Origin: Selaginella moellendorffii | Taxonomy: Eukaryota; Plantae; Lycopodiophyta | Assembly: GCF_000143415.4 (NCBI RefSeq) | Contig: NW_003314361.1 | Coordinates: 310,001-374,000 of the forward strand | Length of the DNA: 64,000 nucleotides | Direction: 5' to 3' | Shown here: in pieces, positions 39,733-45,115 of the stretch | How positions within the stretch are numbered: position 1 is the stretch's first letter | Layout: every line of letters starts with the position of its first letter | Notes under the pieces: model-generated | The model's input: the letters and a program-made list of their open reading frames with translations, nothing else | Told to the model about the DNA's origin: nothing | The model's database searches: none | Position numbers and translations under genes: made by a program

Positions 39733-40513
39733 GTTGGTGTTCTTCCCTCGTTGTCATGCCTGACATTCCCTGTCCATTTCTAGGCTTGATCTAAGTTTGA
39801 CCACATTTGTCATGTGTTTCTCCAGCATTGTTTTTGTTCATGCTCACCCGGCATTCTTGTAAATTTGCCTTCAACCTCTCTTTCTTGTCTTGTGAAGCTG
39901 CTCCTCTTCAAAAGAAATCCTGTCTGTATTTTGGATTTCTTCTCTACATCTTTTACCTGTTATTGCTTCTTAGCCAACTGTAAAGGAAAGTGTAAGTATG
40001 AAAGAGAGCTTTCACAAACCTTGGTCAGGTGGGAAGCACACTTTTCCTCATGGCTTGTGCTCCAGATCTGCGATTAGCTTAGCAGCAGTGGAGGCAGAAG
40101 CAGCGAGGACTCACTGTTGTTGTCTGGGAAACTCTCGGTTCCGGTTCTTCTTGAACACTGCTTCGTGAAGCATGTAGAGGTCACACATAAGATTTATCTC
40201 AAAGTCGACTTCTAGCTGTGCTAGTTGGATTTGCAATTTGAACAGCAGTGAATTTAAAAATACTTTATATCCCTTCTTGATACCTTTTACAAACTTCAGG
40301 ACTTTGTTCATTTTGCATCAATTGAGTCTCTAAACATAAGTGCCACAAGTAGGATCTCTTGGCATATTCTTCACCACTTCTCCTGCCACAACCACCATGA
40401 TCTTGGATCGCACTCCAAGATCATCAATCTCCCTAAACCTCCTGCTGTAGACAAACTAGTTTTGTCATTCTAAAACATAGTGTTGGTTCCTTGTGAAATT
40501 TAAGAACGTCGAT

Positions 40514-42458
40514 TTACTGAGGAGCGGGGTGGTCGAGGTTGAGCTCGTAAAACATGTCCGTGACTGTTCTCCGGCTTCCTCGAGTCGTGGGAGTTCTTAT
40601 CAACGATTTTGTCCCGCTCAGAGGTGTTGAGTTTCTGGGCGTTAAGTTGCCACTTCCCGGTGGTTTGTGAGGCTTGGATGCGTTTCTCACAGGCTCGCTG
40701 TTGAATCTGTGTAGACGACGCGATTATGAGAAGGAAGCATCAGACAAACTAAACCTGGGATCAGCGAAAAACATTCTTATCCGCTCGTCTGGGACGAGCC
40801 AATGATCCTTCTCCTCGCGGATTTGGAGAATGCACAACCTTATGACGTACTGCAAGGAAAACGGGGTAAGAAGAAAGGAAAATGTAACATAATCCCACCT
40901 CTAGAACTCCAAGCTTTGCTGTTCTTACTCCAACATGATCTTCCAGGCCCAAGGGTTCACTGCTTTGGGTACTTGACGACGCACTGTCGTCGTCACCACC
41001 ATCATCCCCATCCATGCATTGCAATGCATAGTGAACAATTCTTGTGACTTGAGGTCGATCCTGACAGGAAAATTACTAGCTTCACATCAAGTTCTTTCAT
41101 TCTCACCCCTGCTGGAGATTCTAGAGGTTCGGGCGAATTATCTGGACACAAAGACCTGGGTCAGAGCTAAACCAAATCCAAGTTTTTGAAAAGCAAATAA
41201 GACCGGAAGTAGCATATACGTCAATGAGAAGGACGGCCTCTAACTCATGTTGTCCAAGCCCAAGAACATGCAAAGTGGAAGAACCTGTATCAACAGAAGA
41301 AAATTATTCAACCATAGCTGCTCAAGTTTATGATTACCAATAGCAGCCACATTTGAAAGAGGTATCGATATATGCTGGTGGTTATTCTCATTGTGATCTT
41401 CGTCCTGGATATGAAAATGCAGACAAAGCTCAGAACCACGAAAAAAAAAAACCAAGAAATTGACAAACCGAATTATCAATCTCAACGAGAAACTCGGCTG
41501 CTGCGTCCGGTAAAGGCACCAATTTTCTGAGTGTCAAAGTGCAGTGCGGTATTTTTTCTTGCCAGCGAGGGAGCATTAATCGAGTTTCATATTCATAAAG
41601 CTTCACTTGGAAACTCAGAACAGCATTCCCAATTTCAGCACCCCGAATCTGCGAGAAAAAACGTTGCTAGTGAGAAAATAGTGAGCATAAAAATAAAAAA
41701 CAACCAAATAGCTGGCGTCCATCAAACGTGCTGGAGAAATTCCATCCTCTTCTGACTTTAGCAACGAGACAGCGTTCATAGCCATCGCCATGTACGGCAA
41801 GATGGCATCCAGTCTGCAGCTCCACAATTTTAAGCAAAAGAACAGTCTCAAAAGGCAATACCTTGTGAGAAAACCTTGTAGCCTGTTCTCTGCCTCGGAT
41901 GGAGAGGTTTTGACGACGTCCTGGAAGATTGGGTCACAGCAATTTTCTTGTAGAGAAAAAACACACCTCATTATAAACTTGACATTCAAGTTCTTTTTGG
42001 AATCTCACAATGTCATTGATCACACGCAATATCATGTCCAAAGCGCCCTGCATGAATCAGAAAAACATCTGGAAACAGTGAAAGAGTATTAAACACTGAC
42101 CTGTAGAACCGTGTTTCCATGGAGCACGTATTGCACACACATATCCACGGGAAGGCCGAGAACCTGCGTCACAAAAACCAACTTAAATCAGATGGGTTTC
42201 TCCAAAAAACTGCTAGCTTGCTAGTGTAGCTTGCTAAACGTACCTGAAGTCTGGATTCCAGCTCCTTTTGCAAGAGCTCAATCTGTAGGGAATAAACTTG
42301 TCATTGATTGATGAAAATGAAAAGGAAACACGAACCCGATGCTGCCCACTGAATCTGGAATGCAGCCGCGTGAAGAGTGACGTGACGGAGCGCTGCGCGA
42401 GCGCCTCGAATGTCTTACGAAGGAGAACCGTCCCGGCATAGAGGGCTGCGGCATCCAT
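40514..42458 (-). CDS. RanGTP-binding protein Yrb30-like (Pfam Ran-binding), about 428 aa, 13 exons: 42458-42336, 42282-42244, 42163-42101, 42047-41967, 41920-41862, 41813-41705, 41648-41469, 41404-41338, 41284-41204, 41141-41107, 41060-40899, 40849-40755, 40706-40514
   Basis: All introns are GT-AG, 46-80 nt and phase-consistent, giving 1287 nt with no internal stop. Motifs LQKELESRLQVLGLPVDM..GNTVLQ, RLDAILPYMAMAM..ISPARLMDAS and LGVLEYVIRLCILQ..HWLVPDERIRMFF match my recollection of conserved Yrb30 blocks. Confidence 0.78.
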
Positions 42459-42517
42459 CCCTGCCAAAGAACAAAAAGAATTAAGCAAAAACCCTTCTAC
42501 CTATAGCGTACCTTTTA

Positions 42518-44041
42518 TTATTTCTTCAAAACGTTCGCCAGCATCACGTAAGGCAAGTGCTTCCCCAGACTTTCGGAGTGATTCGTCTCCAAAACATTCT
42601 CCACTCCCTCGACTCCGGAGATAATGCCATCCGAGTGTGTGATGCAAGCTCCAACGAAGGATGTCCAGCCGATAGCTCCAGGCCTGAGAGGCATCGAATT
42701 CAGCAACTCGTGAGCCTCCGTTAGCTTCCCAACTCTTCCCAGGATGTCAGCCACACAGCAGTAGTGCTCCCTTACGTGCTCGACACCGTGCTGGTCCGGC
42801 ATAGCTCTAAAGTGGTGGAGACTGTCCTCCAAAAGACCACCATGGCTACAAGCTCCGAGAACGCTCGTGAACGTTGCCTCGTCGGGCACGGCACCCTCCA
42901 CGATCATGAGTCGAAAAATTTCGCTGGCTTCCTCGACGTGACCATTCTGTCCGTAGCATCCGATCATGGCGTTGTAGCAAGCCACTGTGCAGTGAGGCAT
43001 TGTGTCGAGCATTTTCCGCGCTTGCTCAACCTTTCCATCTCGGCCGAGAGCTGTTATCATCAGGATCCACGACACGGCATTTCTCTCCGGCATCCTGTCG
43101 AAGACGAACTTCGCAGCCTTGGTGTGCCTGTTTTGTGCGTAGAGGCAAACCATCGCAGTCCATGCGACTAAGTCCTGCCTTGGCATGTCTCGGAACGTCT
43201 CTTGAGCTCTCTCGATGTTGCCATTGGAAGCGTAGGCCTGGAGCATTGTGGTCCAGGAAACGTCGTCTCTCTCTACCATCCGGTTGAAAATCCTCTCGGC
43301 TTCTTCGATATACCCCTTCTGGGCATACGCTTGCACCATGGTGGTCGACGAGACGAGGTTGCGGCAAGGCATGGAGTCGAAAACCAGCCGAGATTCTTCC
43401 ATCAGTCCTTGTTGAGAGTACGCCAGAATCATGACGTTGTAGGACGAGATATCTCTCTCGGGCATCTCCTCAAACAGCTTCTTCGCTTGAGAGACCTGTC
43501 CTCTCTGGGAATAAGCCGTGATCATAGCGTTCGTAGCGACGATATTTCGGTCTGAAAGCTGGGAGAACATATTTTCCGCTTGCAAAAGCTCTCCATTCTC
43601 GGCGTAAGCTTGAACCATTGCCGTCCACGAGACCACGTCCCACTCGGGCATTTGATCGAACATAAGTTTGGCTTGGTCCAGATGCCCACTCTGGGCATAA
43701 GCTCGGAAGATCGTCGTCCAGGAGACTACGTTCCTGTGTGGCATTCTGTCAAAGAGCTTCCGGGCCTCTCCCAGCTCGTCGCTCCACACGAAAGCCGCCA
43801 GCATGATGTTCCAAGAGAAGATGTTGGGCTCCGGGATCCGAGAGAAGACGGCCATTGCTTCGTGGAGCTTGCCGCAGCTCGAGTACATGTGGACGAGCAG
43901 GTTGGAGACGAAAGTGTTGTGTCTGTGCTGGCTGCTGAGGATTGCAAGGTGGATTTTCCGGCCTTGTTTCAAGTCCTTCGTACTGGCGCACTGTTTAAGA
44001 TCTCGGCTGAATTGCTCTACGGACGCCAAGTTGACCACCAT
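42518..44041 (-). CDS. PLS/SS-type PPR protein with E-like tail
   Basis: 507-aa ORF, tandem 31-aa repeats (MPE.DVVSWTAMV.AYA..G), HYCCVADILGRVG, YVMLANV. Confidence 0.92.
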   Translation of the reverse strand: MVVNLASVEQFSRDLKQCASTKDLKQGRKIHLAILSSQHRHNTFVSNLLVHMYSSCGKLHEAMAVFSRIPEPNIFSWNIMLAAFVWSDELGEARKLFDRMPHRNVVSWTTIFRAYAQSGHLDQAKLMFDQMPEWDVVSWTAMVQAYAENGELLQAENMFSQLSDRNIVATNAMITAYSQRGQVSQAKKLFEEMPERDISSYNVMILAYSQQGLMEESRLVFDSMPCRNLVSSTTMVQAYAQKGYIEEAERIFNRMVERDDVSWTTMLQAYASNGNIERAQETFRDMPRQDLVAWTAMVCLYAQNRHTKAAKFVFDRMPERNAVSWILMITALGRDGKVEQARKMLDTMPHCTVACYNAMIGCYGQNGHVEEASEIFRLMIVEGAVPDEATFTSVLGACSHGGLLEDSLHHFRAMPDQHGVEHVREHYCCVADILGRVGKLTEAHELLNSMPLRPGAIGWTSFVGACITHSDGIISGVEGVENVLETNHSESLGKHLPYVMLANVLKK

Positions 44042-44339
44042 GCCGCTCGCGAGTGTGTGTGTGAACGAAAAGGCCGGATGCTTTTCTAGAACGCCTGTGA
44101 AAAAATTTACTTTAAAGTATCAGGAGTGGAGAGAAAGAGGGGAGAAAATCTTTCTACTCAGCTGCTTCATGCCCGTGCGACGCTTTCTCGTTAGCTGTCA
44201 TTGACCTGTGACTAGGACCATGGATGTATTTCCCTGGAAGTAAGAAACAATGGAAAAGTAATCCCACATGAGAGAGTCACGAGTATTTAAACTCAAAGTA
44301 GCTTACCAATGCCTTGAGTCGAGCAGAGCTAGAGTGAAA

Positions 44340-45115
44340 ATGAGCGAGCATCGAATTCCAGTCGCTGCTGACAAGAAAATCTCTCCTCCAATTTCTGCCG
44401 GGGAGCAAAAAGGCTGCAAAGGATTGAAGAGAACGGATCTGATGCTTCGCTTCGCTGCGTTTGTGTGTTGCACTGTCACCATGGTCGTTCTCATCACGGA
44501 TAAGCAGACTAGTGCCATTCAGGTCCCGGGCTTCAATAACTTGACGATCACCAAGACGGTCAGCTTCGACTTGGCCAAGGCGTTTGTGTAAGTTTTTCAC
44601 GGTTTTCTCCTCTCTTTCTTTCTCAAGTCTTCACGTTCGTCTCATGTTTCGTTCGCTTATCGACTGTGCTTACTCGCTGGTTTCTTTTCAGATATCTCGT
44701 CTCTGCGGCAGGAATCGGCGCTGGTTACACGCTCCTTGTGTTGGTCTTGTCGATCATATCTGCAGAGCGCTCCAAGGCTATAGCATGGTTCATCTTCGTG
44801 TTCGATCAGGTCACACCTGTTGAAAGAATTTCAATCAGTTTGGGTGTTGAAGCGTTTTCTTGTCTGCAGCTCATAACTTACGTTCTCCTAGCAGCCGCTG
44901 CGGCATCAACGGAAGTTGCGTATATGGGGGCTCACGCACCACCAGAGGCATCCTGGCTCAAAGTCTGTTCCCTCTTCGGACGGTTTTGTCACCAGCTCGG
45001 AGCTTCGCTGGTTACTTCGCTCATTTCGACGGTGTTGTTCGCATTCTCAGCGGCGATTTCTGCGTATTACCTCTTCAGCAACACAAACGTACGACCTGCT
45101 TACAGCAAAGGGTAG
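44340..45115 (+). CDS. CASP-like protein (CASPL group 2); exons 44340-44587, 44692-44809, 44870-45115
   Basis: Four TM segments, LRFAAF, AFV|YLVSA, FDQ|LITYVLLAAAAAS, WLKVCSLFGRFCHQ. Confidence 0.9.

What the first reader, a model, noticed from the sequence alone, without database searches (positions are those of the whole stretch)
40514..42458. Hidden intact 13-exon gene resembling the fungal RanGTP-binding protein Yrb30 in a land plant
Seen: tiny exons invisible in the ORF track splice through canonical 46-80 nt introns into a stop-free protein of about 428 aa. It ends ...RRTVTDMFYELNLDHPAPQ, which fits a leucine-rich NES pattern. Knowledge: yeast Yrb30p is a RanGTP-binding, Xpo1-exported protein described as fungal-restricted, with a C-terminal NES. 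From memory, its conserved blocks are LE.RI.I...AIDL....GNT.LE, RIE..P..NL..VSP..LL.AS and LLEY.IRL..LQ......V.DE.L..FL. All three occur here in order. Inference: this would be an unstudied Ran-cycle component in a lycophyte, from ancient retention or horizontal transfer.
Basis: partly seen in the sequence, partly recalled or inferred. Interest (0 to 1): 0.85.

Follow-up and report, generated by a model that had tools for sequence, protein, structure and literature searches.

The report
Yrb30-type Ran-binding gene in Selaginella
This is a real, expressed 13-exon gene of the spikemoss Selaginella moellendorffii that encodes a plant relative of the yeast Ran-GTPase regulator Yrb30; the family is not fungus-only, because mosses, ferns, lycophytes and one streptophyte alga also have it, while no seed-plant copy was found.

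Summary
On the minus strand, 13 exons (42458..40514) join through 12 GT-AG introns of 46-80 nt into a stop-free 428-aa protein. RNA contigs from four independent studies show all 12 junctions, including the weak donor at 41203.

The Yrb30 reading is supported:
- A 97%-identical allelic protein scores 62 bits (E 7e-17) on Pfam PF05508.
- The predicted fold's top Foldseek hits are S. cerevisiae Yrb30 and two S. pombe proteins.

The architecture is a helical bundle, then a PH-like domain most similar to Ran-binding domains, then a disordered tail ending in a conserved NES-like motif.

The gene is not unknown. Public records hold two flawed models of it (SELMODRAFT_428281 and LOC112342911), both already tagged PF05508. 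Orthologues turned up in mosses, ferns, lycophytes and Mesotaenium, and none in seed plants. Ran binding, nuclear export and origin (retention versus ancient transfer) remain untested.

One unexpected feature: a 51-nt spliced intron links this ORF to the upstream PPR ORF in RNA contigs, which raises the possibility of a dicistronic mRNA.

The parts
42336..42458 (-). Exon 1 with the start codon (ATG at 42458); 41 aa
   Evidence: The N-terminus aligns with all full-length plant orthologues. RNA joint 42282/42336 seen in 4 runs.
42244..42282 (-). Exon 2 (39 nt)
   Evidence: RNA joints on both sides.
42101..42163 (-). Exon 3 (63 nt); carries the conserved GNT block
   Evidence: joints; block aligned to the fungal member.
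41967..42047 (-). Exon 4 (81 nt)
   Evidence: joints.
41862..41920 (-). Exon 5 (59 nt)
   Evidence: joints.
41705..41813 (-). Exon 6 (109 nt); carries the conserved SP.RLM block at the end of the helical bundle
   Evidence: joints.
41469..41648 (-). Exon 7 (180 nt); first strands of the PH-like domain, with the invariant LTLPRWQEK motif
   Evidence: 100% match to P0001; invariant columns.
41338..41404 (-). Exon 8 (67 nt)
   Evidence: joints.
41204..41284 (-). Exon 9 (81 nt); HVLGLG motif; ends at the weak donor GTCTTA (41203)
   Evidence: joint 41141/41204 in 3 runs.
41107..41141 (-). Exon 10 (35 nt), in a variable loop region
   Evidence: joints on both sides; the same residues occur in RefSeq model P0015.
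40899..41060 (-). Exon 11 (162 nt); last strand, acidic loop and start of the C-terminal helix (KLGVLE)
   Evidence: joints. The old model P0001 lacks this exon, but homologues conserve it.
40755..40849 (-). Exon 12 (95 nt); conserved helix block Y.LRLC.LQ...DERI
   Evidence: joints; aligned with the fungal LLEYIIRL...DERI block.
40514..40706 (-). Exon 13 (193 nt including the TAA stop); low-complexity tail
   Evidence: joint 40706/40755 in 4 runs.
40535..40564 (-). C-terminal hydrophobic motif VTDMFYELNL (aa 413-422), a candidate NES
   Evidence: Conserved as [IV]-x-[DE]-[LM]-F-Y-[DE]-L-x-[LV] in all 8 full-length embryophyte sequences. The spacing fits the class 1d NES pattern, which I cite from my own knowledge. 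Function untested.
40254..40513 (-). 3' UTR (approximate extent)
   Evidence: RNA contigs reach 40254 (X1 record 1) and 40420-40443 (X10, X2, X6).
42461..42511 (-). 51-nt GT-AG intron in the 5' leader. Its donor lies 7 nt after the upstream PPR stop codon and its acceptor 2 nt before the ATG.
   Evidence: Joint 42459/42511 (cut +1) in 4 runs. Sequence read. The same intron is present in haplotype 2.
42518..44041 (-). Upstream intron-less PPR ORF (507 aa). RNA contigs run from it into the Yrb30-like ORF.
   Evidence: ORF. Pfam PPR E 4.6e-90. Contigs X10 record 11, X2 record 14 and X6 record 17. The ORF is intact in haplotype 2.

Best explanation
This is the Selaginella moellendorffii orthologue of a small streptophyte branch of the PF05508 family, whose founding member is S. 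cerevisiae Yrb30p (YGL164C, 'Ran-specific GTPase-activating protein 30').

Shown here: the 428-aa protein has an N-terminal helical bundle (about aa 3-161). A seven-stranded PH-like domain capped by a conserved helix follows (about aa 162-348); its nearest solved structures are Ran-binding domains. The tail is disordered and Ser/Thr/Pro/Arg-rich and ends in a conserved hydrophobic motif.

Inferred by homology, not shown: the PH-like domain binds Ran-GTP; like Yrb30p, the protein competes with RanBP1-type proteins and damps RanGAP-stimulated hydrolysis; and it shuttles, with export by XPO1 through the C-terminal motif.

The lineage is old within streptophytes (a zygnematophyte alga, mosses, lycophytes, ferns) and appears to have been lost before or in seed plants.

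The confidence given (0.8) is for the gene model, its expression and its family membership. For the inferred Ran-binding mechanism I would give about 0.5.
For: - Gene model and expression. All 26 variant letters in the RNA contigs equal haplotype 2, so both alleles are expressed.
- Organism: exon 7 is 100% identical to SELMODRAFT_428281. The second copy lies on S. moellendorffii scaffold GL377688.1 at 98% DNA identity.
- Family by sequence: PF05508 at 62 bits, E 6.9e-17, covering residues 20-262 and profile positions 27-299 of 304. Every plant orthologue tested also passes, at 29.7-60.4 bits.
- Link to fungi: phmmer connects the fern orthologue to Lipomyces arxii P0027 at E 1.7e-6 against 5.8 billion sequences. 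P0027 is itself a PF05508 member at 341 bits. hhalign of the plant profile against P0027 gives probability 97.4%, E 1e-11, over 390 columns and all three conserved blocks.
- Language-model features: score 0.95, 220 of 256 shared, with a PF05508 cluster; 9 of the top 10 hits are the same family.
- Fold: Foldseek top hits are O94589, P53107 (Yrb30) and Q09721 at E about 4e-14, probability 1.0. The top 13 AlphaFold DB cluster hits are family-named or unnamed; none bears another family's name.
- PH-like domain: VIA-align Z 13.1 and rmsd 2.9 A over 116 of 118 residues of the RanBP3 Ran-binding domain. In an unbiased search of 48,161 chains the two best hits are RanBP2 and RanBP3 Ran-binding domains, Z 10.5 and 10.3.
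- C-terminal motif conservation.
Against: - No biochemical data exist for any plant member. To my knowledge the family's function rests on one yeast study in which the deletion had no phenotype.
- The structure models are of modest confidence (mean pLDDT 55.5 for the whole protein, 67.2 for the domain). Whole-chain TM-scores to Yrb30 are low (0.33).
- Ran-binding domains top the fold lists but do not stand clear of other PH-superfold domains: Dcp1, EVH1 and PH reach Z 10-12.
- No hit to the classical Ran_BP1 Pfam family at permissive thresholds. The profile match to human RanBP1 in the PDB is not significant (E 1.6).
- The plant proteins score far lower on PF05508 than fungal ones (62 against 341 bits), so function may have diverged.
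Confidence: 0.8

Rival explanations
1. Origin rival: the streptophyte genes came from an ancient horizontal transfer out of a fungus into an ancestor of Zygnematophyceae plus land plants, rather than by vertical descent from an early eukaryote with later losses.
For: Every named non-plant relative recovered here bears a family-type name and, where taxa are given, is commonest in Ascomycota. No chlorophyte, seed-plant or animal member was seen.
Against: Identity to fungal members is only 16-24%. The one fungal sequence in hand sits on a very long branch, about 10 changes per column in total, so any transfer would be very old. The plant genes have many introns and group by plant lineage: mosses, ferns and Selaginella each form starred clades. 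The searches could not sample other eukaryotic supergroups, and organism names were masked, so fungi-plus-plants-only is not established.
Confidence: 0.2
2. The protein keeps the family fold but no longer acts on Ran. It would be a PH-domain adaptor with some other partner in non-seed plants.
For: The classical Ran-binding-domain sequence signature is not detected. Other PH-like domains fit almost as well. The PF05508 score is much weaker than in fungi.
Against: The most conserved plant columns (LTLPRWQEK, HVLGLG, LEY.LRLC) lie in the PH-like domain and its capping helix. The same blocks align with the fungal member. Ran-binding domains are the single best structural match in three separate searches.
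Confidence: 0.25
3. The real product is a PPR-Yrb30 fusion protein, as in the 767-aa RefSeq model LOC112342911.
For: RefSeq predicts it (P0015). RNA contigs run from the PPR ORF into this ORF.
Against: Both haplotypes keep an intact PPR ORF with its own stop. After the observed splice the two ORFs are in different frames and 8 nt apart. No RNA joint matches the extra frame-shifting intron that the fusion model needs inside the PPR ORF. All orthologues start at the same MD..AALYAG N-terminus without any PPR part.
Confidence: 0.04
4. Fungal contamination of the assembly or of the RNA libraries.
For: The family was known mainly from fungi.
Against: The gene sits between plant genes on two allelic scaffolds at 98% identity. 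Both alleles appear in RNA from four studies. Its closest relatives are other land plants at 45-61% identity, against about 20% for fungi.
Confidence: 0.01

Closest known systems
Saccharomyces cerevisiae Yrb30p (YGL164C, UniProt P53107, 'Ran-specific GTPase-activating protein 30'), founder of Pfam PF05508
   Same: The same Pfam family by profile. It is among the top Foldseek hits (E 4.7e-14). Length is similar (440 against 428 aa), and the order of helical N-terminal part, beta domain and conserved helix is the same.
   Different: Only about 21% identity in the structural alignment. The plant proteins have their own invariant motifs and a different, strongly conserved C-terminal FY[DE]L motif. 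From my own knowledge, the original description of Yrb30p (Braunwarth et al., J Biol Chem 2003) called it exclusive to fungi. That paper is not in the tool's library.
Lipomyces arxii 'RanGTP-binding protein-domain-containing protein' (P0027) and S. pombe SPCC584.03c (O94589)
   Same: P0027 aligns with the plant profile over 390 columns, probability 97.4%, and shares the GNT, SPSRL and LLEY.IRL..LQ...DERI blocks. O94589 is the best Foldseek hit, and UniProt names it a RanBD1-domain protein.
   Different: The fungal proteins are longer (551-667 aa), with large insertions in the loops of the beta domain and different tails.
Classical Ran-binding domains (RanBP1/Yrb1, RanBP2, RanBP3/Yrb2, Nup50/Nup2; Pfam Ran_BP1)
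   Same: PH-superfold domain of the same size and topology. Best Z 13.1 with rmsd 2.9 A to RanBP3, and best hits in an unbiased PDB scan.
   Different: No significant sequence-profile match. Here the domain is interrupted by long acidic loops and preceded by a helical bundle that the classical proteins lack.
Nuclear dicistronic or polycistronic mRNAs of green algae (Gallaher et al. 2021, PMC7896298), relevant only to the side observation
   Same: Two unrelated intact ORFs on the same strand appear joined in RNA assemblies, with a very short spacer.
   Different: Here a single molecule carrying both ORFs is not yet shown. The upstream ORF is long (507 aa, 40 ATG triplets), which argues against the leaky scanning used in algae.

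Membership tests
PF05508 / Yrb30 family | Match to the Pfam PF05508 profile above the curated gathering score (25 bits) | tested here: met
   62.0 bits, E 6.9e-17, on P0015:340-767, which is collinear with the window protein and differs at 12 of 428 residues. 50.9 bits on P0001, the older model of this same locus. Single exons are too short to score.
PF05508 / Yrb30 family | Full-length homology to an undisputed fungal member, including the conserved blocks | tested here: met
   hhalign of A1 against P0027: probability 97.4%, E 1e-11, 390 columns. P0027 scores 341 bits on PF05508. phmmer fern to Lipomyces: E 1.7e-6.
PF05508 / Yrb30 family | Predicted fold matches that of S. cerevisiae Yrb30 | tested here: met
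   The Foldseek Swiss-Prot top 3 include P53107 at E 4.7e-14, probability 1.0. Caveats: TM only 0.33 and model pLDDT 55.5.
PF05508 / Yrb30 family | Binds Ran-GTP, competes with RanBP1 and inhibits RanGAP-stimulated hydrolysis | not testable with these tools
   Biochemical property, known to me only from the 2003 yeast study.
PF05508 / Yrb30 family | Functional Xpo1/CRM1-dependent nuclear export signal | tested here: inconclusive
   A conserved C-terminal motif with NES-like spacing is present in all full-length embryophyte members. Export was not tested, and I could not check whether the motif corresponds to the yeast NES.
Classical Ran-binding domain (Ran_BP1 / RanBD1) | PH-like fold superposable on solved Ran-binding domains | tested here: met
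   Z 13.1 to RanBP3. Z 10.5 and 10.3 to RanBP2 and RanBP3 as the top two of 48,161 chains. Other PH-like domains score within 1-2 Z units.
Classical Ran-binding domain (Ran_BP1 / RanBD1) | Sequence-profile match to the Ran_BP1 family | tested here: not met
   No Ran_BP1 hit at E up to 10 or up to 1. The PDB profile search gives human RanBP1 at E 1.6 only. I therefore do not file it as a classical RanBD.
Eukaryotic dicistronic mRNA (side observation) | One RNA molecule carries both complete ORFs | tested here: inconclusive
   Assembled contigs from 3 studies run from the PPR ORF through the 51-nt splice into this ORF. Contigs can merge overlapping transcripts, and no long reads were available.
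Eukaryotic dicistronic mRNA (side observation) | Both ORFs are translated from that molecule | not testable with these tools
   Needs ribosome profiling or reporter assays.

The most novel reading that the evidence does not exclude
In Selaginella the Yrb30-type ORF is the second cistron of a spliced dicistronic mRNA. Transcription starts upstream of the 507-aa PPR ORF. A 51-nt intron whose donor lies 7 nt after the PPR stop is removed, which brings that stop to within 8 nt of the Yrb30-type AUG (5 nt in the other haplotype). The downstream protein would then be made by termination-reinitiation or another non-canonical route. That would be a new kind of nuclear dicistron in a vascular plant, coupling an organelle RNA-binding factor to a Ran-cycle modulator that seed plants have lost.
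Probability: 0.3. Interest if true: 0.6.

Novelty: new member of a known kind. Interest (0 to 1): 0.33.

Why it matters
From memory, the only functional study of Yrb30 concluded that it is a fungus-specific modulator of the Ran switch. An expressed, conserved orthologue group in a zygnematophyte alga, mosses, lycophytes and ferns shows that the family is not tied to fungal lifestyle. It also adds a Ran-cycle component that model seed plants apparently lack. Physcomitrium has an orthologue and could serve as a genetic system in which to ask what this protein does.

Practically, both public gene models for this locus are wrong. One lacks exon 1, retains an intron and skips exon 11. The other is fused to the neighbouring PPR gene. 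The RNA-supported 428-aa model given here corrects them.

The significance is moderate. Automatic Pfam tagging already places these proteins in PF05508, and no function is demonstrated.

Tried and rejected
- Pfam scan of the ten largest exons one by one: no meaningful hit, because the pieces are too short. I then recovered full-length relatives with a 60-aa exon query against the representative library.
- Literature: no paper in the library holds Yrb30, YGL164C, PF05508 or IPR008812. 'RanGTP-binding protein' returns only unrelated exportin papers. The 2003 JBC paper is not held.
- PDB by sequence profile: nothing for the whole protein, and only a non-significant RanBP1 match for the domain.
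- Divergent seed-plant homologues among unnamed Atlas clusters: best score 0.68, all fungal, so nothing usable.
- Gene neighbourhoods of moss and Diphasiastrum orthologues and of P0001, to test whether the PPR adjacency is conserved: those proteins are not on record in the contig index.
- Tree with one fungal outgroup: plant lineages group sensibly but deep nodes are unresolved and the outgroup branch is very long, so it cannot decide the origin.
- PPR-Yrb30 fusion protein: rejected (see rival explanations).
- Contamination: rejected.
- Not done: I did not submit the spliced 428-aa protein of this exact allele to any tool, because it has no reference. I used the 97%-identical P0015:340-767 in its place.

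Full report
**1. What is in the sequence**

The finding lies on the minus strand. I rebuilt the model from the raw bases.
- The ATG is at 42458 and the TAA at 40516-40514.
- There are 13 exons and 12 introns of 46-80 nt, all GT..AG.
- The CDS is 1287 nt and encodes 428 aa.
- Exon and intron coordinates are listed under parts.

**2. Is it real?**

I laid RNA-derived contigs from four runs of four different studies on 40000-44400.
- Every one of the 12 predicted introns appears as a joint with CT..AC ends on the plus strand, which is GT..AG on the minus strand.
- Each joint is seen in two to four of the four runs.
- All 26 variant letters in those contigs equal the base at the same position in a second genomic copy (L001, scaffold GL377688.1 of S. 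moellendorffii, 98% identical). So both alleles are expressed.
- Contigs with no mismatch to the window cover exons 13-11 and exons 7, 6 and 1.
- The RefSeq protein of the second copy (P0015) contains the same 13 exons. Its residues 340-767 are collinear with my model and differ at 12 positions.

**3. Organism and existing annotation**

Exon 7 is 100% identical to SELMODRAFT_428281 of Selaginella moellendorffii (P0001). Both public models are flawed.
- P0001 (359 aa) lacks exon 1, reads through intron 9, and skips most of exon 10 and all of exon 11.
- P0015 (767 aa) fuses the upstream PPR gene to this gene.
- Both already carry a precomputed PF05508 tag.

So the gene is hidden only in the sense that no long ORF shows it.

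**4. Family**

Sequence evidence:
- Single exons are too short for Pfam.
- The full-length allelic protein scores 62 bits on PF05508 'RanGTP-binding protein' (E 6.9e-17, cutoff 25). The match covers residues 20-262 and almost the whole profile.
- Orthologues from Sphagnum, Ceratodon, Physcomitrium, Ceratopteris and Mesotaenium also pass.
- The fern orthologue finds a Lipomyces arxii protein by plain phmmer (E 1.7e-6). That protein is a strong PF05508 member (341 bits).
- A profile of ten plant sequences aligns with it over 390 columns at 97.4% probability.
- Language-model features point to the same family (0.95).

Structure evidence:
- An AlphaFold2 model has modest confidence (pLDDT 55.5).
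- Its three best Swiss-Prot matches are S. pombe O94589, S. cerevisiae Yrb30 (P53107) and S. pombe Q09721, all near E 4e-14.
- Its top 13 AlphaFold DB cluster matches are family-named or unnamed.

**5. Architecture and likely mechanism**

The model shows three parts.
- Helices span residues 3-161.
- Seven strands span 167-294, followed by a conserved helix at 325-343. This is the PH-superfold pattern.
- The tail is disordered.

The PH-like part aligns best with Ran-binding domains.
- RanBP3 gives Z 13.1 and rmsd 2.9 A over 116 of 118 residues.
- RanBP2, Yrb2, Nup2, Nup50 and RanBP1 give Z 10.7-12.
- A separate model of the domain alone (pLDDT 67) was searched against 48,161 PDB chains without a Foldseek prefilter. 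RanBP2 and RanBP3 Ran-binding domains ranked first and second.
- Dcp1, EVH1 and PH domains score nearly as well.
- Sequence profiles do not reach the classical Ran_BP1 family.

I therefore call it a divergent Ran-binding-type PH domain and do not file it as a classical RanBD.

The last 16 residues hold the motif [IV]-x-[DE]-[LM]-F-Y-[DE]-L-x-[LV]-[DE]-[SH]-P. It is conserved in all eight full-length embryophyte sequences. Its spacing fits a class 1d nuclear export signal, which I state from my own knowledge.

By homology with Yrb30p, as I recall the 2003 JBC study, the most likely mechanism is this:
- binding of Ran-GTP through the PH-like domain;
- competition with RanBP1;
- inhibition of RanGAP-stimulated hydrolysis;
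- shuttling, with XPO1-dependent export.

None of these steps is shown for any plant protein. I put about even odds on Ran binding being retained.

**6. Distribution**

I ran three searches of a 5.8-billion-protein collection: a moss query, a ten-sequence profile and a fern query.
- They returned only Sphagnum, Ceratodon, Physcomitrium, Ceratopteris, two Adiantum species, Diphasiastrum, Selaginella, Mesotaenium, a few unnamed transcript assemblies and one fungus.
- No seed plant appeared, although ferns are their sister group and identities among the plant members are 45-68%.
- No unnamed plant cluster resembles the family in the ESM Atlas.

This fits an old streptophyte gene lost in the seed-plant line. 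The searches depend on shared words, so very divergent copies cannot be excluded.

A tree with the single fungal sequence recovers moss, fern and Selaginella groups but not the deep order, and the fungal branch is very long. Retention and ancient transfer therefore cannot be separated here. A recent transfer and contamination are excluded.

**7. An unexpected feature upstream**

An intron-less 507-aa PPR ORF (42518-44041, same strand; Pfam PPR E 4.6e-90) ends 57 nt before the ATG.
- RNA contigs in all four runs show a further 51-nt GT-AG intron (42511-42461).
- Its donor lies 7 nt after the PPR stop and its acceptor 2 nt before the ATG.
- In three studies a single contig runs from the PPR ORF through this splice into exons 1 to 4 and beyond. 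In one case it starts 150 nt upstream of the PPR start codon.
- Contig depths are similar across both ORFs.
- After splicing, the PPR stop and this ATG are 8 nt apart, or 5 nt in the second haplotype, which has the same arrangement.

So either the mRNA for this gene starts inside the PPR coding region, or the two ORFs share one dicistronic mRNA.

This continuity probably explains the fused RefSeq model. The RNA joints do not support that model's extra frame-shifting intron.

**8. Verdict**

The result is a correctly modelled, expressed plant member of a known but little-studied family. The family's plant branch is already flagged by automatic annotation and has never been studied, as far as the searchable literature shows. 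Novelty: a new member of a known kind. Interest is moderate. The possible dicistronic arrangement is the most novel open thread.

Noticed in passing
window 42461-42511 and 42518-44041 (minus strand); same arrangement in L001:3578-5160: A 51-nt spliced intron sits between the stop of an intact 507-aa PPR ORF and the ATG of the Yrb30-type ORF. RNA contigs from three studies run through both ORFs, leaving only 8 nt (5 nt in haplotype 2) between stop and start. This means either a dicistronic mRNA or a transcription start inside the PPR gene.
   Followed up: partly
window 40514-42458 and 42518-44041; proteins P0001 and P0015: Both public gene models of this locus are wrong. SELMODRAFT_428281 lacks exon 1, retains intron 9, and skips most of exon 10 and all of exon 11. 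RefSeq LOC112342911 fuses the PPR gene to this gene through an intron inside the PPR ORF for which no RNA joint was seen.
   Followed up: yes
protein residues 1-162 (window about 41640-42458, minus strand): The N-terminal helical bundle weakly resembles fungal HeLo / SesA / PigL_N 'fungal N-terminal domain' proteins (Atlas feature scores 0.59-0.68; AlphaFold DB cluster A0A444RQ00 at E 8.4e-4 and 24% identity over residues 1-162). All of these are below the level at which they are more than a lead.
   Followed up: no
window 43703-43884, and loose ends at 43330, 43452, 43680 and 43908: RNA contigs show a 180-nt skip with non-canonical CG..AG ends inside the PPR ORF in three runs, and several contigs diverge from the window inside the PPR repeats. 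These are probably assemblies crossing over to paralogous PPR genes rather than splicing.
   Followed up: no
window 44096-44162 and 44263-44400: One run shows a plus-strand GT..AG joint (65 nt), and contig depth is much higher from 44263 onward (237 in run X1). This points to another, strongly expressed gene just upstream of the PPR ORF.
   Followed up: no
window 40400-44100 compared with L001: All 26 variant letters in the RNA contigs equal the second genomic copy (scaffold GL377688.1, 98% identical), so both haplotype copies of the PPR and Yrb30-type gene pair are transcribed.
   Followed up: yes
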